Shown here in pieces: positions 10,980 through 44,268 of a stretch of DNA of 64,000 bases. The stretch is from positions 284,583-348,582 of IMG/VR virus record IMGVR_UViG_3300027770_000025; one strand, written 5' to 3'. Each line of letters opens with the position of its first letter. The stretch's first letter is position 1. The notes under the pieces are model-generated. The model saw nothing but the letters and a program-made list of their open reading frames with translations, did not search any database and was not told where the DNA came from. Made by a program: the position numbers and the translations under genes.

Positions 10980-11000
10980 CAAATATAATAAATTAGTACG
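10980..11000 (-). promoter_or_regulatory. Putative early promoter CG-N11-TATATTTG (Bacteroidota -7 box)
   Basis: TAnnTTTG is the established Bacteroidota sigmaA -7 element; CG at fixed spacing at 5 sites. Confidence 0.65.
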
Positions 11001-11011
11001 GGGAAAGCACG

Positions 11012-11044
11012 AAAAACCCCGATCTTTATTAAAATCGGGGTTTT
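11012..11044 (-). terminator. Intrinsic terminator
   Basis: AAAAACCCCGAT...ATCGGGGTTTT. Confidence 0.8.
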
Positions 11045-11046
11045 AT

Positions 11047-13524
11047 TTATTTTGCGTCAATGTTGACGCATTTAAAAGGTGATTGCTGGGGTATCTCATC
11101 GAATGAAGTTGAATTCATTCTTTTAACGTGTGTTGCTATGCTAGGATAAATGTCAGCAGCTATATAATAGCAGTTATTACCTAGGATGTTTTTTATTCCA
11201 CTATCAGACCCTTTCATGTTACTCAATGTACCAATTCCCTCAAGTGCAGATGACACCTGTCTTTTTGAAGTTGTTTTCCTTTTCTTAATATCATCATACT
11301 CACCTACAATGATTTTAGATCCTTCATAAGTTAATAAAGGTCCGCTGTCCGAGTCATCTTCAGTTAGACCAAATATACTATCCTTAGATATTCTTTTAGC
11401 TGTAGAAGATCCTAAAACATTATCATTAATCCATTTTATACAGCTTACAAATTTGCTTCCATCGAAGGTAACACAGTTAGCTATCATTACGAGGAAGTTG
11501 TTGATAGCAACAAATTCTTCCTTACCTAAATCTGGGCTTCTGTCACTTTTTTGTAAAGCAATATTGAAAGCTCTAGATATATCGCTCTTAAGATTATCAT
11601 AATCAATAAAAGGAATTTCTTTATTCTTGATAGACGATTCCATCATTTCAAAAGGTCCGGAAAGATCTAGATCATCATTATCTGAATTTTTATTAATTAA
11701 TTGTTTTATACCATCATATCTAAACTGGGGTCTAATCATACCAAATGTTGTCCAGCCTTTAAGATAATTTCTAAGAAATTCCGTTGCGTCTTCGTTACCT
11801 AGTGTTTTAATCTGTCTAGTCTCTGCCCATTTATTCCAGTTGCATGGGGTTTTTAATGACGATGACCCTAGGTTGATATTATAAACTGCACCTTTAGCAA
11901 AAAAGTATGAAAATTCTTCCGCTGGTTTAGCTTTATCTAAAGCTAAATTCCAATCTTTTATAAATTCTGTGCTGTAGGATGATTTAAGAGATCCGTCCTG
12001 CTTAACAAAATCCTCAGACTCCACTTTTATATTATACTCAGATCTAAGCTTTTTAGCTAATCCCCGTACTCCTGACGCTGATTTTGCATCAGATGATCCA
12101 GATGATTTTTCTGGAGATGCTATTGCTCCTTGAGCTTTGTATTGAACAGCTAGCTCCTTTTCGAAGTCAGAATTGTTGATAATAATTTTACCCTCATTAA
12201 CACTAGAGAATAATTCAGAAATACTTTTAACATATCCTGAATTAGATGTGCTCTCATGCATTTTTGTTCCTATCATGTGCAAAGCTGCATTAATGGCTTT
12301 CCTATTCTTAGCTGAAACCCAATCAGAAGCAATTATATCAGTTAACAATGCTTGGTCTATCTGACCACTTGCATTTTTATTACCTGATAATTTTTGGATA
12401 GTTGAGATAACAGAAGTTGTAGCTGGGCCATATTTTCCATTAGGACCTCCTTTAGATTTTATCAGCTTACCTGCAGAAGTTATACCGTCACAAAGTGCAG
12501 TTTGAATAGCAAAGATTAATCCGCTTCCTTTTATCTTCTTATCAGAATCTGAATCCCCTCTTTTTAAAGGAAAAATAGCTTTAGCAGTTTCTACTTCTTT
12601 AACCTCATTTTCATCCTTGATAACCCTAACCGCTATTCCATACTGTGTCTTTGCTCTAGTCATAAGATCTAGTGCTTGACTAACTAAATTAGTAACATCA
12701 GAATATGTTGTATAAACTTCTTCATCATCCTCTAATTTTTGTAAAGACCTATTTGCTGTTTGGATCATAGTGTTGTTAAATTCTTCTTGAAATTTATCAA
12801 CTTGCTTTTCTAATTCTTCAAGCATTTTTCTATCCTTGTCGCCACCATCTGTATTATCTAAAGTCTTTCTCTTCTCGTCAAGATCTAAAAATGTTCTTTT
12901 CCAATCCCTTCCGTATCCTGATTTTTGATCTTTACCCTCAGAAGAACTTATTAAATTAGTAAGTAATTTTTTTAGATTATCAACTCTTCTTTTATACCCA
13001 GTGAAAATAGATTCATTTAGTATATCATCAAATTCAAATCCTTCGCTGTCATTTAGCTTTTCAGCTTCTTCTTCTGCTTGTTTAGCTATATTGTCTATCG
13101 AATTCTGAAGTTTAGTTGTAGCCATCTTAAACTGCTTAAATATAACATCATCTTTAGATTTAGAAATTTCCGAAGTCCTATCAAGTGCTTCAGCAAATTT
13201 ATATAAGCTCTCTAGATACAGTCTTTTAGCTTCAGCATATTTAGAATTTGCTAGATCATTATCGTCTGCGTAGTCGATCAATTTAGCGGTTAAAGATTTT
13301 ACAGTTTTAGAACTTGCAACATCAGAAAGCTTAAGTCTAATAACATCGGGATTTCTATCTCTCTTAGGAGCTAGGTCAAAGGTTAATATCTTGAAAGCAT
13401 TCAAAGCATTATCGCAAACCTTAACAAGCAAAGAATCTACTTGTTCATTTTCTAATAGCTTACTATAATACCCTTCTAATAGCTGTTTAGCTACCTGATT
13501 GTGAATATATGGATTATTGTTCAT
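11047..13524 (-). CDS. Large coiled-coil virion protein with central peptidoglycan-binding (PG_binding_1-like) domain
   Basis: FPLKRGDS...AIQTAL...NGKYGPATTSVISTIQK...GQIDQALL matches the PGBD pattern; several L/V-N-E sites. Confidence 0.6.
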   Translation of the reverse strand: MNNNPYIHNQVAKQLLEGYYSKLLENEQVDSLLVKVCDNALNAFKILTFDLAPKRDRNPDVIRLKLSDVASSKTVKSLTAKLIDYADDNDLANSKYAEAKRLYLESLYKFAEALDRTSEISKSKDDVIFKQFKMATTKLQNSIDNIAKQAEEEAEKLNDSEGFEFDDILNESIFTGYKRRVDNLKKLLTNLISSSEGKDQKSGYGRDWKRTFLDLDEKRKTLDNTDGGDKDRKMLEELEKQVDKFQEEFNNTMIQTANRSLQKLEDDEEVYTTYSDVTNLVSQALDLMTRAKTQYGIAVRVIKDENEVKEVETAKAIFPLKRGDSDSDKKIKGSGLIFAIQTALCDGITSAGKLIKSKGGPNGKYGPATTSVISTIQKLSGNKNASGQIDQALLTDIIASDWVSAKNRKAINAALHMIGTKMHESTSNSGYVKSISELFSSVNEGKIIINNSDFEKELAVQYKAQGAIASPEKSSGSSDAKSASGVRGLAKKLRSEYNIKVESEDFVKQDGSLKSSYSTEFIKDWNLALDKAKPAEEFSYFFAKGAVYNINLGSSSLKTPCNWNKWAETRQIKTLGNEDATEFLRNYLKGWTTFGMIRPQFRYDGIKQLINKNSDNDDLDLSGPFEMMESSIKNKEIPFIDYDNLKSDISRAFNIALQKSDRSPDLGKEEFVAINNFLVMIANCVTFDGSKFVSCIKWINDNVLGSSTAKRISKDSIFGLTEDDSDSGPLLTYEGSKIIVGEYDDIKKRKTTSKRQVSSALEGIGTLSNMKGSDSGIKNILGNNCYYIAADIYPSIATHVKRMNSTSFDEIPQQSPFKCVNIDAK

Positions 13525-13538
13525 AATTTATTAATCTT

Positions 13539-13811
13539 TTAGTATATATTTTCTTTAGGCCCAGCAGCATCCTTACCCGTATTGTTCTTTTGTATTTCAG
13601 CTGAAAGCGTTTTCATCAAAACCGATATTTCCTGATATATTCCAGCCTGTTGGTTTATACTTGCTATCTCTGAAGCAGTATCTCCAGGTTTTTTAGAATT
13701 CTTAGCATTTTTAATTGCATCAAATTTTTGGGAAAGAGTTGTTTTTATTCCCTGTATTTTGGTCTCCCCGCTGTCTTCCTCGTTAATAACGAATTCTCTA
13801 TATTTAAGCAT
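13539..13811 (-). CDS. Small putative internal head protein (MLKYREFVINE)
   Basis: Close match to T4 CTS MKTYQEFIAE; start re-placed at 13811. Confidence 0.6.
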   Translation of the reverse strand: MLKYREFVINEEDSGETKIQGIKTTLSQKFDAIKNAKNSKKPGDTASEIASINQQAGIYQEISVLMKTLSAEIQKNNTGKDAAGPKENIY

Positions 13812-14739
13812 ACTTTCTAGCAATTGTTATTTTAGATCTTAGATCTCTTATCTCATCCATATACTTCTCTCTAATCTCCTTTATTCTTTTAGAAGCTAGT
13901 TCTCTTGCTCGATCCGGACTGGCTGAATTTTCAACTTCTTTATTTAGGATGTCCCTTTCCATATCCATAGCAACATATCTGTCGTTCCTCTCTTTTAAAA
14001 GGAAAGAAACAAGTTTTTTTCCTTGAGCTGGAACGTATTCTTTTATAGCATTTGTAAATTCGACTAAAGGAAGTTTAGCTACGAATTCAAACGAGGCATC
14101 GCTTTCATTCCCTGATTTAGTATAATTATCTGGACCTGATGTTGATTTAGTTGATCCTGATTTATCCTTAAATCTCTCCCCTGCTTCAATGTCTTTAGTC
14201 ATCAGGTTTCCGTACTTATTTCTGAAGTCAATATCTTTCTGCTTAGCTTTTAATAATGCTGCTTTATATTTAGAGTATAATGATCCAGAAAGCGAAGAAT
14301 CTGCTAGGTTTTTAGCTCTCTTATACATCTCCTCAGCTATATCAGCATCAACTTTTGTTTTAAGCTTTTCCCAATATATTCTAACTCTTTTATTATCGCT
14401 TATGACATCTCTAACCTTAGTGAATATGCTTTCCGTCTTCTTCTCGTGAGATCTAGACTGAGCATCCATTAACTCATTATTTCTTTGAATCAAACGATCG
14501 ATTCTTTTTATCTCTGCAGGATCGCTTTTGGTTTGGGATCTTTCTAGATCTAACTTATCGATCTCAACATTAATATCTTCCCATTTTTCAACATATTCAA
14601 GCTCTGCTGATCTGTACTCATTAGCTAATTTATCTAGTGATTCTATACTGCCACCAAAAGTTCCACTTAGCCAGTTTTTTATAGTGTCGAATATGCCAGC
14701 TTCATTTAAGCTGTCCCATTCTTTAAATTTTAAAGTCAT
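13804..14739 (-). CDS. Coiled-coil putative internal head protein, paralog A
   Basis: MTLKFKEWDSLNEA; aligns by eye with 14742..15890. Confidence 0.6.
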   Translation of the reverse strand: MTLKFKEWDSLNEAGIFDTIKNWLSGTFGGSIESLDKLANEYRSAELEYVEKWEDINVEIDKLDLERSQTKSDPAEIKRIDRLIQRNNELMDAQSRSHEKKTESIFTKVRDVISDNKRVRIYWEKLKTKVDADIAEEMYKRAKNLADSSLSGSLYSKYKAALLKAKQKDIDFRNKYGNLMTKDIEAGERFKDKSGSTKSTSGPDNYTKSGNESDASFEFVAKLPLVEFTNAIKEYVPAQGKKLVSFLLKERNDRYVAMDMERDILNKEVENSASPDRARELASKRIKEIREKYMDEIRDLRSKITIARKYA

Positions 14740-14741
14740 AC

Positions 14742-15890
14742 CTAGTTGTTTAGTTTATCTTTTGCAGTTCTTAATTTACTGGCGTCAATATTACCTGAAG
14801 GAGTAACGAATACATCAGAAATTATTTTCTTAGTTCCTGAGTTTGCATCTTCACCATCAGCTATTCCTTGATTTATCATATTAGTTAACTTTGTGAACTC
14901 TTGCTCCTTGCTTAATGTCTTATCTATATCAGATTCAGTTTTGCCTAGATTCCTGAATAATTTTAATAGATTTTTCTTAGAATCCAAAGCTGAGCTAAGT
15001 TCAAGTAATTCAATCTTAGATTTTTCTATGTAAGATTTGCTAACCTTATCTGGATTAGCACCTATTCTTTTCTCCAATACTGTTAACTTTCTCTCGATAT
15101 TTGCTCTTAAATCAGCAATATCTTTTTCAAGTTCCTTTTTTCTCTCGATGATATCTTTTCCTCTTCTCCCCGCAACCTTTTTCTTTTCCTTTTCCGAATC
15201 TAAGGAAAGGTCCTCCGTATCGGGTCCATTATCCTTCTTTTCTTCTTCCGATTTTTTATCCATTTGATCTTTCAGATTCTGAGCTTTCTCTTCTGCTTCT
15301 TTCTTTTTAGCATTAATCTTATCCTGAAACTTCTTGATGTCTACGTCGTCAGCTTTATCCCTAGCCAATTTATATTCAAGTTCAGCTAATGCAATTTCAT
15401 CGTCTGCTCTTCCTGCCTCGTAATACTCTCTTCTTCTAGTGTTATTATCAATAACCTTAGAGACGAAATCTTTTGCTTTTTTTATCTTAAGTGAATGCGA
15501 CTTAATGAAAGTTTCAAACTCTTTCGTTTTAACGTCTCTTTCTCTTTCAACAGAGCTTATTTTTCCCTTGTCGTTTATTGAACTTAAACCATCTATTTCA
15601 GATTCCAGTTTTTCGATATTTTCTTCGAAATTTGCTCTTTTCTCGATAGCATCAATTTCTAAATCTACAAGAAGCTTTCTTGCCTTATCGATCATTCCTA
15701 CCCTAGATAAAGAGCCTAAGAAAAACTTAGAAAGTGAATTTTTAAGGTAGTCACCAAAGATGCCTTCGTTTACTGTGTGATTGGGTTCTGATCTCTCTAG
15801 GGAAGCAAACTCCTCACTAAGTTCACGGTCTACAGTTTCTATCAGAGACTCGTATTTTTTAAAATCATTAAAAGATGGTAGATTCTTCAT
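14742..15890 (-). CDS. Coiled-coil putative internal head protein, paralog B
   Basis: MKNLPSFNDFKKYESLIE; late motif at 15917-15924. Confidence 0.6.
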   Translation of the reverse strand: MKNLPSFNDFKKYESLIETVDRELSEEFASLERSEPNHTVNEGIFGDYLKNSLSKFFLGSLSRVGMIDKARKLLVDLEIDAIEKRANFEENIEKLESEIDGLSSINDKGKISSVERERDVKTKEFETFIKSHSLKIKKAKDFVSKVIDNNTRRREYYEAGRADDEIALAELEYKLARDKADDVDIKKFQDKINAKKKEAEEKAQNLKDQMDKKSEEEKKDNGPDTEDLSLDSEKEKKKVAGRRGKDIIERKKELEKDIADLRANIERKLTVLEKRIGANPDKVSKSYIEKSKIELLELSSALDSKKNLLKLFRNLGKTESDIDKTLSKEQEFTKLTNMINQGIADGEDANSGTKKIISDVFVTPSGNIDASKLRTAKDKLNN

Positions 15891-15957
15891 TACAAAACAA
15901 TACTTTTTTTATATTGTATATATCCAATTGGAATTTTTATTCTTAACCAGGAAGCAC

Positions 15958-15988
15958 AAAAAAACCCTAGGATAAATCCTAGGGTTTT
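15958..15988 (-). terminator. Intrinsic terminator after major capsid gene
   Basis: AAAACCCTAGGAT-AA-ATCCTAGGGTTTT. Confidence 0.85.
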
Positions 15989-23227: not shown

Positions 23228-23265
23228 AAAAAAAGCTTTTCTTGTATATATCAAAGAAAAGCTTT
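23228..23265 (-). terminator. Terminator hairpin whose loop holds the late promoter motif
   Basis: Minus strand AAAGCTTTTCTT-TGATATATAC-AAGAAAAGCTTT-TTTT. Confidence 0.6.
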
Positions 23266-23336
23266 AGATGTTATTATAAACTGAATATTTAGCTAGGGAA
23301 GCATACCTTTAGCATAACTTCCATTACTGTACTAAC
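23245..23336. repeat. 92-bp direct repeat, copy 1
   Basis: Identical to 24013-24104 by base-by-base comparison. Confidence 0.95.
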
Positions 23337-23403
23337 TCGAGAAGATAGTAGGGAAAGAGCTGTTAACTAATTCTCTTGCTTGGTCTAATGTGCGTTTTTC
23401 CAT
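23332..23403 (-). pseudogene. Truncated early ORF MEKRTLDQARELVNSSFPTIFSS*
   Basis: Has its own CG-N11-TACATTTA promoter (23433-23453) but runs into the repeat junction and stops after 23 codons. Confidence 0.5.
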
Positions 23404-23473
23404 TTTGTATATAGTTTTAATTGGTTATGAAGTAAATGTACAAATCCCCTACGTAGGAAAAAACCCTAGGCAC

Positions 23474-23505
23474 AAAAAAAATCCCTGGGGGTTACCAGGG
23501 ATTTT
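23474..23505 (-). terminator. Intrinsic terminator
   Basis: AAAATCCCTGG-GGGTTA-CCAGGGATTTT. Confidence 0.8.
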
Positions 23506-23522
23506 AATTTAATTTATTGGAA

Positions 23523-23993
23523 TTATCTCCCGAAATAATCTTTAACCTCTTTTGCGGTAAGAAGTTCATATTCAGCATAACCATTCGTTAAAACTAGAAA
23601 TTTTCCGTTTGGTATGGTGAAGACAAAACTATCGTCCAGTACTTTAAAATTATCACCTATTTTATAAAGATCGAAAACCCCCTCGCTAAAGCAAGCGAAT
23701 TCAAAAGTATCCCCCAAAGATGGAAATACCTGTATACTTATTTGACTGGCGTAATCGGCTCCATATACATCGTCTTTCGATACAAATTGTTCTAACTCTC
23801 GTAGGTAAGCTGCCTCTGATAGGCTATTTATGGTACCAACTGCTAATCCGCCACCGCCCATATCGGCTATACAAATTACCCCGTTCCTGTAATCATTAGA
23901 ACCTTCTCTAAAACCTGCATTAGGGTTAGGTGTTCCAATTCTTGGATCTTCTCTGAAAGATTCAAATTGTGCAATGTGTTTTGTTCTGTTCAT
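23523..23993 (-). CDS. Putative internal head protein in repeat-flanked cassette (MNRTKHIAQFESFRE)
   Basis: CTS-like start; late motif at 24013-24020. Confidence 0.6.
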   Translation of the reverse strand: MNRTKHIAQFESFREDPRIGTPNPNAGFREGSNDYRNGVICIADMGGGGLAVGTINSLSEAAYLRELEQFVSKDDVYGADYASQISIQVFPSLGDTFEFACFSEGVFDLYKIGDNFKVLDDSFVFTIPNGKFLVLTNGYAEYELLTAKEVKDYFGR

Positions 23994-24012
23994 TTTTAGT
24001 TATTATTTTACC

Positions 24013-24104
24013 TATATATCAAAGAAAAGCTTTAGATGTTATTATAAACTGAATATTTAGCTAGGGAAGCATACCTTTAGCATAACTTCCATTACTGTAC
24101 TAAC
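24013..24104. repeat. 92-bp direct repeat, copy 2 (3' end of exonuclease gene plus late promoter)
   Basis: Identical to 23245-23336. Confidence 0.95.
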
Positions 24105-24764
24105 ATCGAGTTCACAGTACGTTTTAATGTTTTCATAGTCTTTATCAATCCAGAATGAATCATTTACTTTGGATCCGTCCATTATTCCCTTAGGCGATTC
24201 TATACCAAGAGAACAAGAAAGAAGATCCAGGCTTAAGTATTTTTGATGTGTCCAGCTACCGAAAGCAAACACGTCTGATGTATCAACATACGGAATCTCC
24301 CATGGCTTCTTGTCCCAGATTCTAATATTTGCTGGCGGATTGATTCCATTATAGACCATTCTTTTACCTAAGCAGGGAACGTCAAATCCTTTTATATTAT
24401 GACCGCACAACTTCCAATTTTTTGAAGCTGCATTATTAAGCACCTTAGCTGTTTTAGTTAGAATGTCATGCTCATCGTCCCCGTAGAAAGATGCGAATCT
24501 CACCTCTCCTATATCAGTAAATGATCCAAAAGAAACACACACAACTCTGGAAAATTCAGGCTCTAATCCAGCCTTTTGTTTATAAATAGTTTCAGGATCT
24601 TCAGCAGATAATGACGGATATGCTCCAAGATAATATGCTTCCCTCTTTTTCCATAGCTGCCATAAACGGGGATTAGCATCATGTAATGTTTCGAGATCCT
24701 TATAAAGAGCTGCGGTCTCAACATCAAAATAAAGATATTTATAAATGTCTTCTTTTTTAAACAT
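24057..24764 (-). CDS. DEDD 3'-5' exonuclease (PolB-exonuclease-like)
   Basis: YFDVET, GHNIKGFDVP, YCELDV motifs; early promoter at 24779-24799. Confidence 0.85.
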   Translation of the reverse strand: MFKKEDIYKYLYFDVETAALYKDLETLHDANPRLWQLWKKREAYYLGAYPSLSAEDPETIYKQKAGLEPEFSRVVCVSFGSFTDIGEVRFASFYGDDEHDILTKTAKVLNNAASKNWKLCGHNIKGFDVPCLGKRMVYNGINPPANIRIWDKKPWEIPYVDTSDVFAFGSWTHQKYLSLDLLSCSLGIESPKGIMDGSKVNDSFWIDKDYENIKTYCELDVSTVMEVMLKVCFPS

Positions 24765-24809
24765 AATTTGGTTTTTTACAAAGATAATAGAATATCGCGG
24801 GAATAAAAA

Positions 24810-25709
24810 TTATTTCTTCGAATTTTTATTTATTACTATAGGGGGAAGAGATTTATGATCCATTCTGTATTTTAAGCATGCATCTTCTCTTGCTGGGGAT
24901 TCTATGATTACGTCTATATCCAAGCCGAATGTTGGTATCCTTCTTTTGAGGTATTCTGATTGCTTTGGTATAGATGGTATTCCATAAGCATCACATTCTT
25001 GTGACTCTGAATGTATAAATACAGGTTTTTGCCCAGCCTTCCAGGTTGAGCAGGAAAGAAAAAGGGCTTCTCTTATACTAAGTCCACCATCATTAAACTG
25101 ATGTGGCAATAGCCTAAAACATATTGGAATATTAGATCTGTAGTAAATACCAGATAGAAGATCAGTAACTGAGAAAAGACTGGGTTTGTCATCATTAACA
25201 ACACAAAGTTTAGAAACGACTGTACTGTCCATCTCCGATAATCTCTCACAAAAGAGATCCATAGTATTTCTTCTATTTCCATAAGCTGATCCAACTCTAA
25301 CCATTATAGACGGGTAGTTAATCCCAATTAAATCCAGAATGCTAGATAGTCTGGATAGTAACGATATTGTAGAGCTCTTAATATTATCCAATTGCGTACC
25401 TAAGAAATATTCCCTGTTTATACATAGAAATATTCTGAGATCATTTTTAGTTATTGCCGAATTTATCTCATCGATTATATTCGATACAGGGGATTCTTCC
25501 TCTATTACCTCATTAAAGAAATTTGGTGAAAATTTAAAATTACATACATCTATACATGTGATCTCTATATCGAGCTCAAGATTTAATTTTATATTATCTC
25601 TAATTACACAGAGAAACTCCTCATATGAATTTATCGGGTAGTTTATATCATATGATTCAGAGTGTGGACCTATATAAGATAATTTCGGTGGCGTTTGTCC
25701 TAATATCAT
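24810..25709 (-). CDS. uvsE: UV-damage endonuclease (UvsE/UvdE) homolog with degenerate active site
   Basis: VGSAYG, NDDK..FSVTDL, IPI, STW, HSES, DVIIE scaffold present; metal-ligand residues altered. Confidence 0.7.
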   Translation of the reverse strand: MILGQTPPKLSYIGPHSESYDINYPINSYEEFLCVIRDNIKLNLELDIEITCIDVCNFKFSPNFFNEVIEEESPVSNIIDEINSAITKNDLRIFLCINREYFLGTQLDNIKSSTISLLSRLSSILDLIGINYPSIMVRVGSAYGNRRNTMDLFCERLSEMDSTVVSKLCVVNDDKPSLFSVTDLLSGIYYRSNIPICFRLLPHQFNDGGLSIREALFLSCSTWKAGQKPVFIHSESQECDAYGIPSIPKQSEYLKRRIPTFGLDIDVIIESPAREDACLKYRMDHKSLPPIVINKNSKK

Positions 25710-29897: not shown

Positions 29898-31244
29898 TTA
29901 AAATTTCGAAGAAAGATCGTCTGAAGAATCTTTGTCCTGTCTAATGTCTACAAAACGTGGTAAGAAAAGGGATCTATTCTCGTGCTTATCTGTAATAGTG
30001 ACGTTATATAAAACTGCTGCGATTTTTCCAATGTGTGAATCGGGATCTTTACTTAAAGATTGTAAATCAAGATCTGTGAATCCGGATCCAACTTTAACAT
30101 TAAGTGTCTTCGAAGCATCAGTCATAATAAACCCACCGATATAGCCTTCCCTTTTACCTTCACCTGGATACCATCCGGTAATTTCAAGGTCACATTCATT
30201 AACCTCTTTGAACTTGACCCATGATTTAGATCTTTTGCATTCATAAGCACCGTTGTCTTTACAGATTACACCCTCTCCACCAATATCTACAATTTTTTTA
30301 TAAATTGCAGGGACTTCACCAGGATCAGAAAGCTCCCACATCTGGGCAAGCTTAACTGGTGATTCATCGGATAATCCATTGGTAATTTTTTCTAAAGTGT
30401 GTCTCCTATCAATATACTCTAAAACACCAACTCCTTTATCTAAGGTTACAAGTTCATCGAAATCAAAAACATTAAATAAAAATCCACTCTCTATATCAAT
30501 ACTGGCTGTTCCCTTTAGTATTTGTGTTACCTTACCGCTAACTGACTTTCTATTTAAGTCAGTTAATTCGCCGTCAAAAAACCAATTACCAGATAAACCT
30601 GAGTTTATCATACAAAGTTTTAAATCGAAAGTTATCTTAGGGAAGCAAGAGGCATTAAGCTCATTGAATGCCCGGGTAAAATATGTTATCTCACCATTTT
30701 TATATACTGCAATCACACGGACGCCATCATATTTTTCCTCACAATAGATTTTGTCCCATTTATCGATTGTTGAATGATCGTCGGTAGCTAGCATTAAGGA
30801 AGGATCTGGGATTAGCTCTCTAGAAAGTGCCTTATTAATTAGCTTTGCTCCAATCCCTATGTTCATTCTCTTGGTTAATATCTTCATAAGAGTCTTGCGG
30901 AGTTCTTCGTCTTCGCTTTCAACCTCTGATAATTTAGAGGATAATAATGTTTCCGCTCTAGATCTTAGCGAATCGTTTGCAGCGGGTGCTTTCTTTAAAT
31001 CTTCAACCAAATCTTTAAACTCCTCCCATAAATTAGGATTATGCTCTTTACACTGGGGTGGGAAATTTAGCTTATGCAGCTTAGTAGTAACAAAAGGATT
31101 AAAGCATGTATCCAGGATATACTCCATTTGAGGATTTATTGACTCCTTAATTAATACCTGTTTTGCTTTTTGCGAGCCATCACCTGTTAGAGATTCTACT
31201 ACCTTTAGAATCTTAATACTGTTTACCATTTCATCAAATTTCAT
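29898..31244 (-). CDS. ATP-dependent DNA ligase
   Basis: EEKYDGVR, FDGEL, EGVICK, KFKE, VGSGFTD, LFLPRF; early promoter at 31262-31282. Confidence 0.95.
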   Translation of the reverse strand: MKFDEMVNSIKILKVVESLTGDGSQKAKQVLIKESINPQMEYILDTCFNPFVTTKLHKLNFPPQCKEHNPNLWEEFKDLVEDLKKAPAANDSLRSRAETLLSSKLSEVESEDEELRKTLMKILTKRMNIGIGAKLINKALSRELIPDPSLMLATDDHSTIDKWDKIYCEEKYDGVRVIAVYKNGEITYFTRAFNELNASCFPKITFDLKLCMINSGLSGNWFFDGELTDLNRKSVSGKVTQILKGTASIDIESGFLFNVFDFDELVTLDKGVGVLEYIDRRHTLEKITNGLSDESPVKLAQMWELSDPGEVPAIYKKIVDIGGEGVICKDNGAYECKRSKSWVKFKEVNECDLEITGWYPGEGKREGYIGGFIMTDASKTLNVKVGSGFTDLDLQSLSKDPDSHIGKIAAVLYNVTITDKHENRSLFLPRFVDIRQDKDSSDDLSSKF

Positions 31245-31465
31245 ATATTGTATATTTTCTACAAATATAACGAATGATAACGGTTAAAAAAAATTATTCC
31301 TGATAATTTCGGAAAGAAAATTAGCACAATGGCGAAGGGTATTTAATATCTTCTATTTCACATTTTAACCATACTGTATTGAGTCATACGGTATATTGAA
31401 GGTGTTATGCTGATATAATGAGTAGAGTCGCTTATAACTGACTATAAGCTGTATTAAGAAAATAT

Positions 31466-33079: not shown

Positions 33080-33088
33080 TTCTTATTT

Positions 33089-35831: not shown

Positions 35832-36191
35832 TTAAACGTTATAAGTGTTATCATCACCAGTTATATAACTGAATGGTATCATCTTAGGACTTTTCGGAGG
35901 ATGCAGTTTCTTCCATCCTTTTGCAAATCCATTCTTAGCTATTTGAGTAAAATAAGCAAATGGATTGTTAGATTTTTCCGGATTGAATCTGTCCCAATAT
36001 TTACAAAGATCCTCCATAGCAAATGCCATGCAATCCTCTTTGTCTTCCGGATCCTTATAAGCCATTTTTTTAGATATACCTTGTATCATAAGGTTAAACA
36101 TTCTTATGGTCTCGGGGGTAAGTTTACCCAATTTTTTTGATTCTATAACAGCGACAATAAGTTCACTATTTCTAACATATTCTTTTGCCAT
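35832..36191 (-). CDS. gp55: Late-transcription sigma factor (gp55-like, short)
   Basis: YVRNSEL, FNPEKSNNPFAYFTQI. Confidence 0.8.
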   Translation of the reverse strand: MAKEYVRNSELIVAVIESKKLGKLTPETIRMFNLMIQGISKKMAYKDPEDKEDCMAFAMEDLCKYWDRFNPEKSNNPFAYFTQIAKNGFAKGWKKLHPPKSPKMIPFSYITGDDNTYNV

Positions 36192-36254
36192 TAATTTTTT
36201 ATATTTTTTAAGGTTGGTATTACTCTTTCTAGTAGAAAAAAGGTAAATTATTTC

Positions 36255-36286
36255 AAAAAAAAGAACGTAGCCTATTGTCTACGTTC
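36255..36286 (-). terminator. Intrinsic terminator
   Basis: Minus strand GAACGTAG-ACAATAGG-CTACGTTC-TTTTTTT. Confidence 0.8.
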
Positions 36287-36303
36287 CCTGATTGTTTTTA
36301 ATA

Positions 36304-36462
36304 CTATTTGGAGTCTTCTTTTGTATCTTCTTCCTCTTCTTGTTCTTCTTGTTCTTTCCCTGTTGGGGCTTTACTTAATTTTCCTGCGGAAGAATCTACG
36401 AATTTTTTTCCCGGTGCGTTCTGATTTTCTGCCTTAGGAGCAAAATAGAAGTTGCGGCTTAG
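36304..36462 (-). CDS. -1 frame extension (52 aa) of the 766-aa protein
   Basis: LSRNFYFAPKAENQNAPGKKFVDSSAGKLSKAPTGKEQEEQEEEEDTKEDSK*, with no start codon, opening at the TTA AAA AAA AAC TAA slippery site. Confidence 0.6.
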   Translation of the reverse strand, partial: LSRNFYFAPKAENQNAPGKKFVDSSAGKLSKAPTGKEQEEQEEEEDTKEDSK

Positions 36463-39329: not shown

Positions 39330-39333
39330 TTTA

Positions 39334-40008: not shown

Positions 40009-40015
40009 CTTTAAA

Positions 40016-40696
40016 TTAATTTATTTTTGTCGGATCCATTTCAACCGCTGTGTTATATCTTCCTGCATTTAATGATTCTACAATTTCGCCAACTGGTTCC
40101 TCTGACTCGTTTGAATCACCCCCATCGACAACTTCACCTATTTTTTCTTCCAGTTCCTCGATTTTTTCCTCTAGCTCTTCGACTTTATTATCTAGTGCCT
40201 CCTCTATTTTTTCTTCGAGTATAGCTTCTATTTTATCTTCAGTTTCAGACTGGACTGCTTCATCAGTGGGCTTTATGTAATCAACCAAAGATTTAATAAA
40301 CCCCAGAGCAACAATAGGTAGAATTGCTCCACTAACTATCGAGAGGACCCTTTTTTGATATATGAGATCCTCTTCAGTTAGACCAAATAATTCTATCCAA
40401 CCCTGAAAATTAGCCAGGTGCGTGTATGCGTAATATGTGTTACCCATAGCTTGCATAAGGGTCAATAATATAAAAAGACCCCAAACTATACCCTTATTCA
40501 TCTTTTCGAGTGTAATTATCGAAGCAAGTGAAGCTGCAGCACCAATCTCGAAAGCCACTGCTAAACTTACAGCTAACCAATCTGGATTGGATAGCTTAAA
40601 GAAGTCTATTACGTGTATTGTCGAGATTACTGAAACAAGTAAGTACAGTGTAACAAATGTACCTATTATAAAATAGCCCGTTGTTTTCTTTCCCAT
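40016..40696 (-). CDS. Four-TM membrane protein with acidic coiled-coil tail (holin-like?)
   Basis: Four hydrophobic stretches in the N-terminal 140 aa; late operon. Confidence 0.5.
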   Translation of the reverse strand: MGKKTTGYFIIGTFVTLYLLVSVISTIHVIDFFKLSNPDWLAVSLAVAFEIGAAASLASIITLEKMNKGIVWGLFILLTLMQAMGNTYYAYTHLANFQGWIELFGLTEEDLIYQKRVLSIVSGAILPIVALGFIKSLVDYIKPTDEAVQSETEDKIEAILEEKIEEALDNKVEELEEKIEELEEKIGEVVDGGDSNESEEPVGEIVESLNAGRYNTAVEMDPTKIN

Positions 40697-40995
40697 TATT
40701 TAGAATTTTCAAGTTTTTTAATTTCAAGATCTATTTCAGATTGGCGATTAACATCCATGATTTTTCTGTCCGTAGATTGAATCATTCTTTTTTCTGCTTT
40801 TAGACCTTCGATCTCAATAATCTTATTTAGCTCGTTTTTAGTGCAAAGAGAATCCATATAAGAGCTTTGGATTTTAGAATTTTTCTCTAGTCTATCTAGG
40901 TCTCTGTTTACTCCGCATTGTCTCAATAGGATGATAAGGGTTAAAAATAGGGTGATAGCCCAAGAATAACTTTTAATTTTTTCTATCGTTTTCAT
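40696..40995 (-). CDS. Single-TM coiled-coil protein (spanin-like?)
   Basis: N-terminal TM WAITLFLTLIILLRQC then coiled coil; late motif at 41017-41024. Confidence 0.45.
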   Translation of the reverse strand: MKTIEKIKSYSWAITLFLTLIILLRQCGVNRDLDRLEKNSKIQSSYMDSLCTKNELNKIIEIEGLKAEKRMIQSTDRKIMDVNRQSEIDLEIKKLENSK

Positions 40996-41040
40996 ATAGC
41001 TGTTTTTATTTCTTTATATATATCTATAGTAAAATGCAAC

Positions 41041-41072
41041 AAAAAACCGATCCTTAAAAAGAACCGGTTTTT
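41041..41072 (-). terminator. Intrinsic terminator (imperfect stem)
   Basis: AAAAAACCGATCC...GAACCGGTTTTT. Confidence 0.6.
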
Positions 41073-41096
41073 ATATGATTTTTTTTGTTTATTAAA

Positions 41097-41627
41097 TTAT
41101 CCTAAAGAAACCCCTTGCATAGCAGCACCTAATTGCTGTTCGAGGTCTTTAATCTCAGAAACATCTTTCTTAGCATCATTTAAAGCCTGATCGAATGGTT
41201 TATATAATTCAATAAAGGTTTCAGCGCTTTTAAGTCCTTTACCTCTACCTTTAGAGATAAAATAATGACTTGCTTCTAGGGGTAAAGCAGACATATAAAT
41301 AACCTGATTCTTTACTCCCTCTTTTTTAATTTTCTGAATTTGCTTACTTACTTCTCTAACCCCTAGAGCTTCAGTAGAATTCCATTCAGCCTCATTAGTC
41401 ATGTAATCCTCATATTTAGCTAAAAGCTCTTGACTAAATGTTATTGCATAAACTTTAGTTTTAATTTCTTCCTTTCTAGATTTGATTTGGGATTCTAAAG
41501 ACTCAACGAGATCCTTATCGATAGAAAAACCGCTCTCTTGGTTTATAGTATCGAAGTCAATTGAAGCAGATGCTCCGGGTCCGTTTTGAAGTTCTAATGT
41601 AGTTTCTTCTAATTTTTGCTTTGCCAT
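41097..41627 (-). CDS. Hypothetical helical protein
   Basis: ORF with GAAAC-N17-TAAAAT promoter motif at 41649-41676. Confidence 0.7.
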   Translation of the reverse strand: MAKQKLEETTLELQNGPGASASIDFDTINQESGFSIDKDLVESLESQIKSRKEEIKTKVYAITFSQELLAKYEDYMTNEAEWNSTEALGVREVSKQIQKIKKEGVKNQVIYMSALPLEASHYFISKGRGKGLKSAETFIELYKPFDQALNDAKKDVSEIKDLEQQLGAAMQGVSLG

Positions 41628-41676
41628 ATTATTTTTTTGTATTTATTTATTTTAGTTGTTTTTGTGTGATTGTTTC

Positions 41677-42486
41677 CTAATCAATAGAAAAAATATCAAA
41701 ATCTACCCTATTGTCATTAAGATATGCTCTAAGAGGCTCCCTCAAATCTTTTGTCTTATATACTTTCGCAGGACCTTCTGGCCCAATATGGCAAAGAAAT
41801 CCGTCCTGGGTCTCTATATTTGCTTCCTCCTCTAATATCAATCTATATAGACTAATCTGAATGGAATATTCATTATGATTGTTTTCATATAGATGAGAAA
41901 AAGGTCTAAGTAATTTTTTATATCTACCCTTGGGATGCTCGTCATGTTTAAAATCCCCGTTCGTTTTCCAATCTCCAATCAGTAAAAATGGCTTATCGTG
42001 TTCTTCCGACCAAAAAAGAAATGGCTGATCTATAGTTCCAGCTAATCTCCATCTTCTAGAAAATATTTTTAGCTCCGATTTAAGTGGCAATAAAACGCTT
42101 AGTCTTTTATCGTGGATCTCCATGAACTTTTCAATTCTTTCCCTTAATATCTCATCATCAGGAATAATTGGGGCTTTACCGCTCCAAAAGTCTTCTATCC
42201 ATTTATGAACTCTAGTGCCCAAGCTATTAGCTACGTCCGCCTTACCCTGCCATTCATTAAGAACTACTGAAACATCAACACCTCTTTCGTCTGCCTTTCT
42301 TTTAGACCAATATTCCCTGTCAAAAGGAACTTTAAATGTTTTAAGAAATGTTGTTACTGAATCAAACTTTGAAGAGTTATATCTGTATACGTGTGATGGT
42401 TCATCGAAAGTAAACCCACGATCATCGAATATCTCTAGCTTTATCTCTATCTCTTTTTTAGCGCTTATTAGTCTAGAATCCATCAA
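41677..42486 (-). CDS. PD-(D/E)XK (RecB-like) exonuclease
   Basis: SVTT, GTRVH, AGTID, IGDWKT, YSIQISLY. Confidence 0.85.
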   Translation of the reverse strand: MMDSRLISAKKEIEIKLEIFDDRGFTFDEPSHVYRYNSSKFDSVTTFLKTFKVPFDREYWSKRKADERGVDVSVVLNEWQGKADVANSLGTRVHKWIEDFWSGKAPIIPDDEILRERIEKFMEIHDKRLSVLLPLKSELKIFSRRWRLAGTIDQPFLFWSEEHDKPFLLIGDWKTNGDFKHDEHPKGRYKKLLRPFSHLYENNHNEYSIQISLYRLILEEEANIETQDGFLCHIGPEGPAKVYKTKDLREPLRAYLNDNRVDFDIFSID

Positions 42487-42929
42487 AACAAATTAATTAG
42501 GTAACTTGCATTTGCTATAGTAAATACAAGTAAGAAAATTTCTAGTATAAATCTAAATATCCATATCCAGCTCAATTCTCTAAAAACGTATTGGTAAACT
42601 ACCAGGTAGGACTCCTCGTCGGTTCCTTTAATTGGTTCTATCCATAGAGTTATTAGTTCCTCTATGTTAATAGCCTTGAAGTATTGATTTATGGGCTTTA
42701 TCTCGTTCATAACAAAAGAAGGTCTTGCTTCTTTTGGTAGATCTGCAGAAAATAGAACCTCTGGGGGTAGATTTACCACAGTATAGATTCGGCCAAACCA
42801 ATCTATTCTCATTCCCTTCCTTGTCCAGATTGGGGACTTTCCCAACTCTTCTTTTATAATCTTAAGATAATCCCTATATAATTTGATATCTTTATAAACT
42901 TTAAAAAATTTTAATATAGCTAGCCACAT
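42483..42929 (-). CDS. Hypothetical membrane protein
   Basis: C-terminal hydrophobic helix. Confidence 0.65.
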   Translation of the reverse strand: MWLAILKFFKVYKDIKLYRDYLKIIKEELGKSPIWTRKGMRIDWFGRIYTVVNLPPEVLFSADLPKEARPSFVMNEIKPINQYFKAINIEELITLWIEPIKGTDEESYLVVYQYVFRELSWIWIFRFILEIFLLVFTIANASYLINLF

Positions 42930-42963
42930 ATTTTTGCTTTATGTTTTATATGAGAATTACACA

Positions 42964-43596
42964 TTAATGTTTCCCCTCCATCTTTTTTTTGATCCTACCC
43001 CTTGCTCTTCTTATTCGAGTAGCGATAGATCTTTTCTTAATGCCATACTTTTCTGCTATGTCCTTGTATTTCATACCATTAATCTCTCTGTCAATCATAA
43101 TATCTCTATAGGTATCAGGTAAAGATCTTATTTCATCTAAAACGGACTCATAAACAGAGTCAATGGTATTTTCCTCGCTAAAGAATCCATATGCTGGATC
43201 ATCCTCAATAGTATAAAATCCACCTATTTCTCCTATTGTGTTTTTAGAAGAAAGGTACTCTAAATCACCATCCTCATGAGCTATTAATCTCTTTCTAGAT
43301 TTCAGAAGTAATAGCGATTCATTTCTTGCTATGTTATAACACCATGTGGAAAAATTACCTCTCTCCATATCATATTGATCTATCTTTAGCCATATCTTGG
43401 ACATGGTATTAAGAAAAGAATCCTCTGCTAATTCCATATTTTTTAGAATCAAAAAACAATGGTTGGATACACCAGGTTTAAGTCTGTTAAATAAATCACT
43501 GAATGACTTGTCTGTTTTATTTAGAATGAAATCCTCTGCTAATGTCTGAATGTTTGTCTCTTTAATCTCCTTTACTTCTCTGTGTTCTTTTTGCAT
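42964..43596 (-). CDS. ECF-type sigma-70 factor
   Basis: Region 2 AEDSFLNT...FSTWCYNIARN; region 4 LPDTYRDIM...GMKYKDIAEKYG...SIATRIRRAR. Confidence 0.9.
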   Translation of the reverse strand: MQKEHREVKEIKETNIQTLAEDFILNKTDKSFSDLFNRLKPGVSNHCFLILKNMELAEDSFLNTMSKIWLKIDQYDMERGNFSTWCYNIARNESLLLLKSRKRLIAHEDGDLEYLSSKNTIGEIGGFYTIEDDPAYGFFSEENTIDSVYESVLDEIRSLPDTYRDIMIDREINGMKYKDIAEKYGIKKRSIATRIRRARGRIKKKMEGKH

Positions 43597-43598
43597 AT

Positions 43599-44204
43599 TT
43601 AGATTTGGTCAAATTGGTTAATTTTATATAATTCTATTCCAGCCTCTATTAGAAATGGAAGTGAATCTGGTTTTCTATAAACTTCTGAAAAAACTACTCT
43701 TTTTATTCCCGATTGTATTATCAATTTAGAACATTCAAAGCAGGGGGAAAGAGTTACATATATTGTAGATCCATCGGAACTTTGGGTACTCTTTGCAAGT
43801 TTTGTTATCGCGTTTGCTTCCGCATGAAGGACGTAGGGTAATGTAGCCATATTCTCATCCTCACAGATATTAGGAAATCCAGTTGGTGATCCATTATAGC
43901 CATCAGAAATTATTGATTTATCCTTTACCATTAAGCATCCCACCTGCATTCTTTTACAGTGAGAATTTTTTCCCCATGTATTAGCCATTTGTAAATAGAT
44001 AAGATCGTTTTTCATTGCCTTTGAATTTTCCCCATATAATGGGCTTTTTTGAATGGCATCGGAATGATCCCAGGAAATGTCAAAAGTTTTTCCTATTTTT
44101 TTGACGCTCCAATTATTTATGCTAAGGAAATCTGGATTGGAGAAATCAAAATCTTCTGAAACTATTTCTCGTCCTGAATAATGTGATAGTATAGATAACT
44201 CCAT
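43599..44204 (-). CDS. dCMP deaminase
   Basis: VGC, GYNG, HAEANAI, SPCFECSK; early promoter at 44221-44241. Confidence 0.9.
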   Translation of the reverse strand: MELSILSHYSGREIVSEDFDFSNPDFLSINNWSVKKIGKTFDISWDHSDAIQKSPLYGENSKAMKNDLIYLQMANTWGKNSHCKRMQVGCLMVKDKSIISDGYNGSPTGFPNICEDENMATLPYVLHAEANAITKLAKSTQSSDGSTIYVTLSPCFECSKLIIQSGIKRVVFSEVYRKPDSLPFLIEAGIELYKINQFDQI

Positions 44205-44268
44205 TAGTTTATAATTTCTGCAAACATAATAAAATTGTACGAGGAAAAAAAATATTTTACGATATTTT

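What the first reader, a model, noticed from the sequence alone, without database searches (positions are those of the whole stretch)
10980..44241. Bacteroidota-type early promoters with an invariant CG exactly 11 nt upstream of the -7 box
All five class I sites share a T-run, then CG, then exactly 11 nt, then TAnnTTT(G/A): tttccccCG, ttattccCG, tttaacCG, tttcctCG, tttcctaCG. TAnnTTTG is the established Bacteroidota sigmaA -7 element, which together with the AT-rich SD-less leaders indicates the host phylum. A fixed-position CG in an AT-rich spacer is not part of the textbook TTTG/TAnnTTTG consensus. It could be a phage activator site or an extended promoter element.
Basis: partly seen in the sequence, partly recalled or inferred. 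Interest (0 to 1): 0.6.

Follow-up and report, generated by a model that had tools for sequence, protein, structure and literature searches.

The report
Jumbo-phage early promoters with fixed CG
A 349-kb freshwater phage of Bacteroidota carries about 60 copies of one promoter type. It combines the host's normal -7 box with a phage-specific upstream box: a run of seven T, then a CG locked exactly 11 bases before the -7 box. Its relatives share this design, host genomes do not, and what reads the CG is still unknown.

Summary
All five window sites exist on the minus strand. Four sit 14-18 nt upstream of a start codon, and the fifth (23433) sits 29 nt upstream. The window is the last 64 kb of a 348,582-bp virus record. 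A weight matrix finds 63 such sites genome-wide, against 0-1 in shuffles. The consensus is A-T7-A-T-C-C-CG, then N11, then TAnnTTTG, with A at the predicted start.

CG before TAnnTTTG occurs 48 times at N11, against 4-13 at neighbouring offsets. It stays at N11 when the T-run shifts. It is kept in orthologous promoters of five relatives while flanking bases vary.

It is not strictly invariant. CG is present in 52 of 64 sites, and in 31 of 34 outside a dense early-gene cluster.

Sampled Bacteroidia genomes lack it: 1 of 150 comparable sites has the CG. Four unrelated IMG/VR phage records checked carry only 1-2 sites each.

The sites precede two phage sigma genes, DNA-metabolism genes, tRNAs and many small ORFs. 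A second motif, GATATATA, precedes structural genes. No phage RNA polymerase was found.

Best reading: these are host sigma-A early promoters with a phage-specific upstream element at -37 to -24. It could be the holoenzyme itself or a phage cofactor.

The parts
44221..44253 (-). Class I promoter. T8 run, CCT, CG, N11, then TATGTTTG. Predicted start near 44216. It drives the dCMP deaminase gene (43599-44204) and an ECF-type sigma gene (42964-43596).
   Evidence: Sequence. Matrix score 34.0 bits, 16 nt before the ATG. Pfam hits for both genes. Orthologous promoter ahead of the same sigma gene in five relatives, with CG kept in four of them.
31262..31294 (-). Class I promoter. T8 run, AAC, CG, N11, then TATATTTG. 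It drives the ATP-dependent DNA ligase gene (29898-31244).
   Evidence: 27.8 bits, 17 nt before the ATG. Pfam DNA_ligase_A_M. Related contigs keep the box and CG with a changed spacer (loci L141, L150, L185; L076).
24779..24811 (-). Class I promoter with a shortened T-run (AATTTTTATTCC, then CG). N11, then TATCTTTG. It drives a PolB-exonuclease-like / RNase H-fold gene (24057-24764).
   Evidence: 25.0 bits, 14 nt before the ATG. Pfam DNA_pol_B_exo2.
23433..23465 (-). Cluster-type class I promoter. T6 run, CCTA, CG, N11, then TACATTTA, followed by the leader AACCAATTAAAAC. Only a 23-codon ORF follows it. It lies inside a 769-nt cassette (23256-24024) flanked by a direct repeat.
   Evidence: Sequence. 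Below the 12-bit matrix cut. A contig of metatranscriptome run X20 joins 23255 to 24025, skipping the cassette.
10980..11012 (-). Weak class I promoter. CCC then CG, N11, then TATATTTG. The T-run is displaced and belongs to the terminator hairpin just upstream. The leader carries a 10-bp hairpin. It drives a P-loop protein gene (10377-10961).
   Evidence: 13.4 bits. Hairpin of -18.4 kcal/mol abutting the box. Weak AAA_14 hit.
42964..43596 (-). Phage ECF-type sigma factor gene (210 aa), second gene of the operon behind the promoter at 44221.
   Evidence: Pfam Sigma70_r2 and Sigma70_r4_2. NCBIfam Sig70_bacteroi1. Present in all five relatives checked.
35832..36191 (-). Minimal sigma factor gene (119 aa, region 2 only). 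It is the candidate reader of the GATATATA motif. It has no class I or class II site upstream.
   Evidence: Pfam Sigma70_r2. 86-88% identical in four relatives.
51994..52001 (-). One example of the second promoter class, GATATATA. This copy lies ahead of the tail sheath gene (48614-51964). Other window copies start at 4959, 7039, 8933, 15924, 19101, 19762, 22482, 23252, 24020, 34766, 38791, 41024 and 57182.
   Evidence: 62 of 77 genome copies lie within 100 nt upstream of a gene start, a 13-fold enrichment. PHROG hits for sheath and prohead protease.

Best explanation
WHAT IS WELL SUPPORTED (about 0.85)
Class I sites are the early promoters of a jumbo-phage family that has no RNA polymerase of its own. 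They are started by the host's primary sigma factor (sigma-A, the 'ABfr' type). That sigma reads the perfect -7 box: T-12, A-11, T-8, T-7, T-6, G-5. Transcription starts at a conserved A five bases after the G.

The host's weak -33 TTTG and its AT-rich, variable-length spacer are replaced by a phage-specific box of fixed geometry:
- A at -37
- T7 at -36 to -30
- A/T at -29 and -28
- pyrimidines at -27 and -26
- CG at -25/-24

The CG is a functional element. It sits one helical turn upstream of T-12/A-11, so on the same face of the DNA. It is locked in register with the -7 box.

These promoters express the phage's own sigma factors. Those sigmas are inferred to switch the core enzyme to the GATATATA promoters of the structural genes.

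COMMITTED MECHANISM FOR THE CG (inferred, about 0.4-0.45)
The CG is contacted by the RNA polymerase holoenzyme itself, in the stretch between sigma region 4 and sigma regions 2/3. It acts as a spacer element that strengthens and marks phage promoters. The T-tract supplies the upstream contact or curvature in place of TTG.
For: - Motif statistics.
- A at the predicted +1 in 38 of 48 sites, and almost no G at -10/-9. This matches TAHHTTTG and the 4-5 nt start rule in F. johnsoniae (PMC6847099).
- No canonical TTG-N18-21-TAnnTTTG lies ahead of any gene. Class I is therefore the only promoter class with a host -7 box.
- No RNAP beta or beta' homologues were found.
- Class I sites precede the RpoD-like sigma gene (genome 70181), the ECF sigma operon, ligase, exonuclease, deaminase, ClpB-like ATPase, tRNA genes and about 30 small ORFs.
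- GATATATA precedes sheath, protease and other structural genes.
- The CG stays at N11 when the T-run end moves to 16 or 18 nt (10 cases). This points to a reader fixed relative to the -7 box.
- There is no dyad symmetry around the CG (z = -0.5). This fits an asymmetric reader.
- Orthologous promoters of the sigma operon in six phages keep the T-run, the CG (5 of 6) and the -7 box, while the 4 nt before the CG and the 11 after it vary.
- G109 (99% complete) and G110 (92% complete) lack the RpoD-like sigma yet have the promoters. In G109, 14 of 14 carry CG. The phage's own sigma-A-like protein is therefore not required.
Against: - No transcription start, timing or binding data exist. The only RNA run holds assembled contigs of a related strain, which cannot show starts.
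- If the holoenzyme had an intrinsic preference for this CG, some host promoters should use it. In 201 Bacteroidia genomes, 1 of 150 listed T7-N17-TAnnTTTG sites has it. CCCG-N11-TAnnTTTG is no commoner than its reversed control, 614 against 721.
- Four unrelated IMG/VR records (one of them complete, 50.9 kb) carry only 1-2 such sites each.
- Lak-A2 shares the T-run architecture (38 sites) but never the CG.
- All sites avoid the G that would make a host TTTG (1 of 39). This is odd for promoters tuned only for host sigma region 4. It is typical of promoters read with a helper such as T4 MotA/AsiA.
- No part of any bacterial holoenzyme is known to read bases at -25/-24.
Confidence: 0.42

Rival explanations
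1. Sigma appropriation. A phage-family protein, injected with the DNA or made at a low level from the same promoters, docks on host sigma-A / RNA polymerase. It reads the T-tract and CG box in place of the -33 element, as T4 MotA with AsiA reads the MotA box at -30.
For: - The box replaces the -33 TTG in every site and ends 11 nt from the -10-like box. This is the same zone as the MotA box, 11-13 bp from -10 (own knowledge).
- It is asymmetric.
- As a repeated class it is confined to this phage family. Hosts lack it, four unrelated phage records carry 1-2 sites each, and nearly all exact matches in IMG/VR are relatives of the phage.
- Lak shares only the T-run.
- The bases between T-run and CG differ by lineage: ATCC in this phage, ATTC/ATTT in G105 and G109.
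Against: - No MotA C-terminal domain or AsiA homologue was found.
- No other host-type promoter exists from which such a factor could be made first. It would have to be packaged in the virion or rely on basal activity.
- The CG is locked to the -7 box rather than to the T-run. This fits a rigid holoenzyme contact at least as well.
- No candidate gene was identified.
Confidence: 0.33
2. The box is an operator for a phage-encoded early-gene shut-off protein. The protein binds over -37 to -24 and turns class I promoters off at the switch to late transcription. Initiation itself needs only the -7 box.
For: - The box overlaps the region where RNA polymerase must bind.
- All class I promoters could be silenced together.
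- Phages such as phi29 (p4) and SPO1 (TF1) use such proteins (own knowledge).
- The element is family-specific.
Against: - A repressor site need not keep a one-base-exact distance to the -7 box, yet the CG does.
- There is no dyad symmetry.
- The T-run sits exactly where the host upstream element lies, so it is more simply a promoter part.
Confidence: 0.1
3. The phage's own RpoD-like sigma (304 aa, genome 70285-71199) reads class I promoters. Its altered region 4.2 would recognise the box.
For: - Its gene carries a class I promoter, which allows positive feedback.
- Region 4.2 differs from the host at the position of E. coli R584: host LTRERVRQ, phage MSSERIRQ. Region 2.4 also differs.
- The gene lies next to the dense cluster of class I promoters in four phages. 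G109 and G110, which lack the gene, showed no such cluster with the pattern used.
Against: - G109 and G110 lack this sigma but keep class I promoters with the CG.
- The -7 box is the exact host consensus, although the phage sigma has changed the -12-reading residues.
- The protein cannot be present at time zero unless it is packaged.
Confidence: 0.07
4. The CG has no function. It is inherited with promoter cassettes that spread by duplication.
For: Many cluster promoters are clearly paralogous, with shared leaders and shared spacer ends.
Against: - Information content falls to about zero at -11 to -4 between two highly conserved blocks.
- CG is kept in diverged orthologues and in phages with only 40-60% protein identity, while neighbouring bases change.
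- CpG is under-represented genome-wide, observed/expected 0.68.
Confidence: 0.05

Closest known systems
Bacteroidota sigma-A (sigma-ABfr) promoters: -33 TTTG / -7 TAnnTTTG
   Same: The -7 box is identical, including the absence of G at -10/-9. There is an A at the position where starts fall, 4-5 nt after the box. The upstream region is AT-rich.
   Different: There is no TTG at -33, and only 1 of 39 sites has G after the T-run. [quoted passage not shown] A CG sits at -25/-24, which host genomes do not show.
T4 middle promoters (MotA box at -30 plus sigma-70 -10; MotA/AsiA sigma appropriation)
   Same: The host -10-type element is kept. The -35-type element is replaced by a phage-specific asymmetric box that ends about 11-13 bp from it. 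There are dozens of copies per genome. The phage belongs to the same broad T4-like 'group 2' jumbo set, which relies on host core enzyme plus phage sigmas.
   Different: No MotA or AsiA homologue was found. The box sequence is unrelated. No separate, earlier host-type promoter class exists here.
T4 and T5 early promoters (host sigma-70 promoters with a phage-specific extended consensus and A/T tracts)
   Same: They are read by unmodified host holoenzyme at time zero. Their consensus is much longer and tighter than the host's. There are many copies ahead of small early genes, each often with its own terminator.
   Different: Those promoters keep a recognisable -35 hexamer. Here the equivalent G is avoided, and a GC step is conserved inside the spacer.
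Spacer elements read by RNA polymerase (extended -10 TGn; the 'Z-element' contacted by the beta' zipper)
   Same: These are short, position-locked elements between the two main boxes that add affinity.
   Different: The known elements lie at about -22 to -14, not at -25/-24. None is a CG. None has been described for Bacteroidota.
Lak megaphage upstream motif (found here in Prevotella phage Lak-A2)
   Same: The T6/7 run lies at the same distance from TAnnTTTG. There are 38 copies and 0 in the reversed control. TerL is related.
   Different: There is no CG at N11. Lak has TG directly before TATCTTTG.

Membership tests
Bacteroidota sigma-A promoter | -7 box TAnnTTTG (TAHHTTTG) | tested here: met
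   All sites carry TAnnTTT[GA], with G at the last position in 36 of 48 seed sites. G occurs at the two n positions in 1 of 48 and 3 of 48. The rule is from PMC6847099.
Bacteroidota sigma-A promoter | Transcription start 4-5 nt after the -7 box | tested here: inconclusive
   A is conserved (38 of 48) at the fifth base after the G. No 5'-end data were available. The RNA run holds contigs only.
Bacteroidota sigma-A promoter | -33 element TTTG / TTG | tested here: not met
   The T-run covers the position, but G follows it in only 1 of 39 sites, against about 52 of 150 comparable host sites. No TTG-N18-21-TAnnTTTG lies ahead of any gene.
Bacteroidota sigma-A promoter | [quoted passage not shown] | tested here: not met
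   The distance from T-run end to TA is 17 nt in 43 of 80 sites and 16-18 in 58. CCCG sits inside the spacer. The host rule is from PMC7366714.
T4-type middle promoter (MotA/AsiA) | Phage-specific box replacing the -35-type element at a fixed distance from a host -10-type box | tested here: met
   The box spans -37 to -24 and ends 11 nt from TA.
T4-type middle promoter (MotA/AsiA) | MotA and AsiA homologues encoded by the phage | tested here: not met
   PF09158 (MotCF) and PF09010 (AsiA) give no match at E <= 1 in the whole genome. Analogues with other folds are not excluded.
T4-type middle promoter (MotA/AsiA) | A separate earlier promoter class from which the activator is made | tested here: not met
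   No canonical host promoters were found.
Group 2 jumbo phages (host core RNAP plus phage sigmas) | No RNAP genes; a minimal sigma and an RpoD-like sigma; T4-type terminase and sheath | tested here: met
   The definition is from PMC7824862.
UP element (alpha C-terminal domain site) | A/T tract at about -40 to -60, upstream of the -35 element | tested here: not met
   The T-tract lies at -36 to -30, in the place of the -33 element. Upstream of it only a weak A/T bias is seen.

The most novel reading that the evidence does not exclude
The T-tract and CG box is the docking site of a so far unknown phage-family protein, packaged in the virion or made very early. This protein would take over Bacteroidota sigma-A by replacing its -33 contact. 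That would be a sigma-appropriation system unrelated in sequence to T4 MotA/AsiA. Part of it (the T-run) would be shared with the Lak megaphages of the gut.
Probability: 0.3. Interest if true: 0.75.

Novelty: new variant of a known kind. Interest (0 to 1): 0.55.

Why it matters
- Transcription of the huge uncultured phages of Bacteroidota (Lak, 'moraphages' and their kin) is unstudied. No paper in the searched library reports this motif.
- A 33-nt promoter architecture with about 60 copies per genome gives a ready map of early against late genes in these genomes.
- It is also a sequence signature for recognising family members and fragments in metagenomes.
- It offers compact candidate promoter parts for Flavobacteriia and other Bacteroidota, where genetic tools are scarce.
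- The position-locked CG is a clean, testable handle. Either Bacteroidota RNA polymerase reads a spacer position nobody has described, or these phages carry a new kind of promoter-specificity factor.

Tried and rejected
- A megablast of 24 kb of the window against GenBank phages found no match.
- The sigma-70 consensus scan was uninformative, as expected for Bacteroidota: 62 hits against 75 in shuffles.
- RNA evidence. One metatranscriptome run (X20) holds about 14% of the words. Its contigs are 90-99% alike and short, and they cannot show starts or strands, so no transcription-start information came of it.
- T-run as a terminator tail. Only 22% of sites have a stable hairpin abutting the run, against 5% in shuffles. 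This is a secondary use at most.
- Palindromic operator. There is no dyad symmetry around the CG.
- Methylation idea. No C5 DNA methyltransferase domain was found. N4 and other methylases were not searched.
- Exact-box matches in bacterial genomes. There are 20 single hits. Eight are one orthologous small-RNA locus of Bacteroidales MAGs, and the rest are scattered. By my own rough estimate this fits chance among host promoters that have a T-run. It is not a host promoter class.
- Third promoter class. The motif GAAAT...CTAGAATA is conserved upstream of the minimal sigma gene, but a loose genome scan gave only 35 hits against about 17 in shuffles. This is not established.
- PDB holds no Bacteroidota sigma-A structure that could show what lies near -25.
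- PMC1951883 (ompA promoter mutagenesis) is not held in the library.
- The host-genome counts include two unpublished genomes, G098 and G194. They contribute 5 of 614 and 15 of 769 matches, so the conclusion does not depend on them.

Full report
WHAT THE WINDOW IS

The window is the last 64 kb (284,583-348,582) of a single 348,582-bp IMG/VR virus record. The record is 36% G+C and CheckV rates it complete. Nearly all genes lie on the minus strand.

The window holds the tail sheath, large terminase, portal and prohead protease genes. The terminase is 32-39% identical to those of uncultured megaphages, Sphingomonas phage PAU, Tenacibaculum phage PTm1 and the Prevotella Lak phages.

No RNA polymerase beta or beta' domain is present. 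There are three sigma-70-family genes:
- A 304-aa protein with regions 1.2, 2, 3 and 4 (genome 70285-71199). It is 39% identical over its full length to the roughly 287-aa primary sigma of four Bacteroidota MAGs.
- A 210-aa ECF-type protein that matches the Bacteroidetes subfamily model (window 42964-43596).
- A 119-aa protein with region 2 only (window 35832-36191).

This is the 'group 2' jumbo-phage layout: host core enzyme plus phage sigmas (PMC7824862). Near-identical DNA occurs in freshwater and lake metagenomes from about 15 studies.

THE OBSERVATION

All five sites are present as described, on the minus strand. Four lie 14-18 nt before a start codon, and site 23433 lies 29 nt before a 23-codon ORF.

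Genome-wide, the CG turns out to be the end of a 14-nt box. From 48 seed sites the consensus is w-w-T-A-T7-A-t-C-C-C-G, then N8, then t-C-T, then TAtaTTTG, then c. Information content is near zero in the eight bases after the CG.

A weight matrix finds 63 sites above 12 bits, against 0-1 in shuffles. Almost all lie just upstream of a gene on the same strand. The median distance from the -7 box to the ATG is 25 nt.

CG before TAnnTTTG occurs 48 times at N11 and 4-13 times at N8-N14.

Using the F. johnsoniae numbering (T-12, A-11, T-8, T-7, T-6, G-5, start 4-5 nt further on; PMC6847099):
- The CG lies at -25/-24.
- The T-run lies at -36 to -30.
- The base at the predicted +1 is A in 38 of 48 sites.
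- G is nearly absent at -10/-9, as in the host rule TAHHTTTG.

HOW INVARIANT THE CG IS, AND WHAT IT IS LOCKED TO

CG is present in 52 of 64 sites.
- Outside a dense cluster at 74-98 kb, 31 of 34 sites have it.
- Inside the cluster, 21 of 30 have it. The rest read CCCA, CTCA, CTCT or CCGA.
- Cluster sites carry two extra conserved features. One is ..CT just before TA (22 of 30). The other is a leader AACCAAyTAAAAC (26 of 30). Both are rare elsewhere.

There are therefore two sub-classes. The window's sites are of the dispersed kind, except 23433.

When the T-run ends 16 or 18 nt from TA instead of 17, the CG still lies at N11 (10 cases). The CG is in register with the -7 box, not with the T-run. 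There is no dyad symmetry around it.

The T-run doubles as a terminator tail in only about a fifth of sites.

COMPARISON WITH RELATIVES

The exact 33-nt pattern occurs in 59 stretches of about 40 IMG/VR contigs. Many of these contigs are 125-434 kb long. Nearly all encode homologues of this phage's proteins.

In five whole relatives, A-T7-N17-TAnnTTTG occurs 51, 36, 17, 14 and 5 times. The reversed control gives zero in every one.

In G109, all 14 sites have CG at N11, while the four bases before it vary.

The promoter ahead of the dCMP-deaminase / ECF-sigma operon (window 44221) is at the same place in all six phages. The T-run, the CG (5 of 6) and the -7 box are kept, and the bases between them differ. 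The ligase promoter (window 31262) behaves the same way in related contigs.

G109 (99% complete) and G110 (92% complete) lack the 304-aa sigma but keep the ECF-type and minimal sigmas. The phage's sigma-A-like protein is therefore not needed for class I promoters.

In the four phages that have that gene, it lies next to a dense cluster of class I promoters. This association is unexplained.

Further away, Lak-A2 has 38 sites with a T6/7 run at the same distance from TGTATCTTTG. The control gives zero, and none has the CG. PTm1 and the 462-kb phage LR756500 show background only.

Four unrelated IMG/VR records, including one complete 50.9-kb phage, carry only 1-2 sites each.

COMPARISON WITH HOSTS

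- In 101 sampled Bacteroidia genomes, CCCG-N11-TAnnTTTG occurs 614 times, against 721 for the reversed control. The phage has 21 against 0.
- In 201 genomes, T7-N17-TAnnTTTG occurs 769 times. Of the 150 matches listed, one has CG at N11, and about a third have G straight after the T-run, which is the host TTTG (counted by eye).
- In the phage the figures are 32 of 39 and 1 of 39.
- The 20 exact matches in 596 Gb of prokaryotic genomes are single sites. Eight of them are one small-RNA locus of Bacteroidales MAGs.

Both the CG and the avoidance of TTG are therefore phage-specific. These counts include two unpublished genomes (G098, G194), which contribute under 2% of matches.

WHICH GENES ARE SERVED

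Class I sites precede:
- the RpoD-like sigma gene and the ECF-sigma operon
- ATP-dependent DNA ligase, a PolB-exonuclease-like protein and a ClpB-like ATPase
- P-loop proteins and three tRNA loci
- about 30 small ORFs at 74-98 kb

A second motif, GATATATA, has 62 of its 77 copies within 100 nt upstream of a gene. Its leaders can be as short as 4-10 nt. It precedes the sheath, protease and other structural genes.

No canonical host promoter (TTG-N18-21-TAnnTTTG) lies ahead of any gene.

The simplest cascade, which is inferred and not shown, is this. Host sigma-A fires class I promoters. These express the phage sigmas. The minimal sigma then reads GATATATA, by analogy with T4 gp55 and TATAAATA.

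MECHANISM OF THE CG

Shown:
- The CG is position-locked to the -7 box.
- It is asymmetric.
- It is conserved across diverged relatives.
- It is missing from the sampled host genomes, from Lak-A2 and from the four unrelated phage records examined.
- It does not depend on the 304-aa sigma.

Inferred: at -25/-24 it lies one helical turn from both the -33 region and T-12/A-11, so it faces the enzyme.

I commit, at about 0.4, to direct reading by the host holoenzyme as a spacer element. The reasons are that these promoters must fire first and that the register with the -7 box is exact.

The main rival, at about 0.33, is a phage-supplied cofactor of the MotA/AsiA kind. In its favour are the restriction to one phage family, the avoided TTG and the lack of any host use. 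Against it are the missing MotA/AsiA homologues and the lack of an earlier promoter class.

An early shut-off operator, reading by the phage RpoD-like sigma, and a hitch-hiking CG are less likely. The reasons are given under the rival explanations.

NOVELTY

Phage-specific early or middle promoter consensus sequences are a known kind. This box, its CG at -25/-24, and its spread through a family of uncultured Bacteroidota jumbo phages were not found in the literature searched. The 'moraphage' paper on aquatic Bacteroidota jumbo phages does not analyse promoters. I rate the finding a new variant of a known kind.

Noticed in passing
window 4959, 7039, 8933, 15924, 19101, 19762, 22482, 23252, 24020, 34766, 38791, 41024, 52001, 57182 (minus strand); 77 copies genome-wide: A second, more abundant upstream motif, (G)GATATATA(r). 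62 of its 77 copies lie within 100 nt before a gene start, some only 4-10 nt before the ATG. It sits ahead of the sheath, protease and other structural genes. It is probably the late promoter class read by the minimal sigma, by analogy with T4 TATAAATA.
   Followed up: partly
window 23256-24024: A 769-nt cassette flanked by a direct repeat of about 90 nt. The repeat comprises the 3' end of the exonuclease gene plus a GATATATA promoter. The cassette holds a 156-aa gene, a terminator and the class I site 23433, which drives only a 23-codon ORF. A contig in metatranscriptome run X20 joins 23255 to 24025, so a related strain lacks the cassette.
   Followed up: partly
genome 74-98 kb (L004/L005), outside the window: About 22 copies of the repeat GGGAACGTTGACAACGGTT, mostly antisense to the small early genes and near their 3' ends. 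It could be a conserved C-terminal coding motif of a paralogous family, or a DNA site such as an ECF-type -35 GGAAC. Not resolved.
   Followed up: no
genome 98-135 kb and elsewhere (L005-L007), behind GATATATA sites: Many genes behind class II promoters begin with similar codons, M-K-N/H-L/I-K-x-F/Y-x-x-F/Y-E. This suggests a large paralogous family.
   Followed up: no
window 36192-36458, and L122-L125: The minimal sigma is 86-88% identical across the family, far more conserved than most proteins. Its upstream region shares GAAAT..(about 20 nt)..CTAGAATA after a terminator. This may be a third ('middle') promoter type, but a loose genome scan gave only a two-fold excess.
   Followed up: partly
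L082, L087, L089-L092, L096, L099 (Bacteroidales MAGs): An exact copy of the phage box plus -7 box precedes a conserved transcript of about 110 nt. The transcript begins GTACAGGATTTGGCACGATATTTG and ends in a GC-rich terminator. It is a candidate small RNA. It contains a sigma-54-like TGGCAC-N5-TTG string.
   Followed up: no
MK250019.1 (Prevotella phage Lak-A2), whole record: 38 sites with a T6/7 run, then 17-18 nt, then TGTATCTTTG, on both strands. The reversed control gives none. This is a putative Lak promoter class with the same T-run geometry, a TG before the -7 box and no CG.
   Followed up: partly
genome 45.7-47.6 kb, 55.5 kb, 120.7 kb, 182.5 kb, 200.2-200.65 kb: The phage carries tRNA genes (His, Cys, two Arg, Met, Lys) and a tmRNA with tag EVEYAYAA. 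Several tRNAs sit behind class I promoters.
   Followed up: partly
window 63881-64000 and genome 2584-4338: Both ends of the record carry short in-frame tandem repeats: 9-nt GGAGCACAA units at the window's end, and similar GGTAC/TCAGGA-rich units near the start. They look like collagen-like or Gly-rich repeat proteins. The record is classed 'linear' without terminal repeats.
   Followed up: no
window 10935-10975 (minus strand leader of site 10980): The leader behind the weak class I site carries a perfect 10-bp hairpin (GGTGGAACAT ... ATGTTCCACC) before the A-rich stretch and the ATG. It may be a regulatory or stabilising structure.
   Followed up: no
genome 70206-70284 (L004): Between the class I promoter at 70181 and the start of the RpoD-like sigma gene (70285) there is a leader of about 90 nt. 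It has an out-of-frame ATG 17 nt after the -7 box, so it may hold an upstream ORF or a regulatory leader.
   Followed up: no
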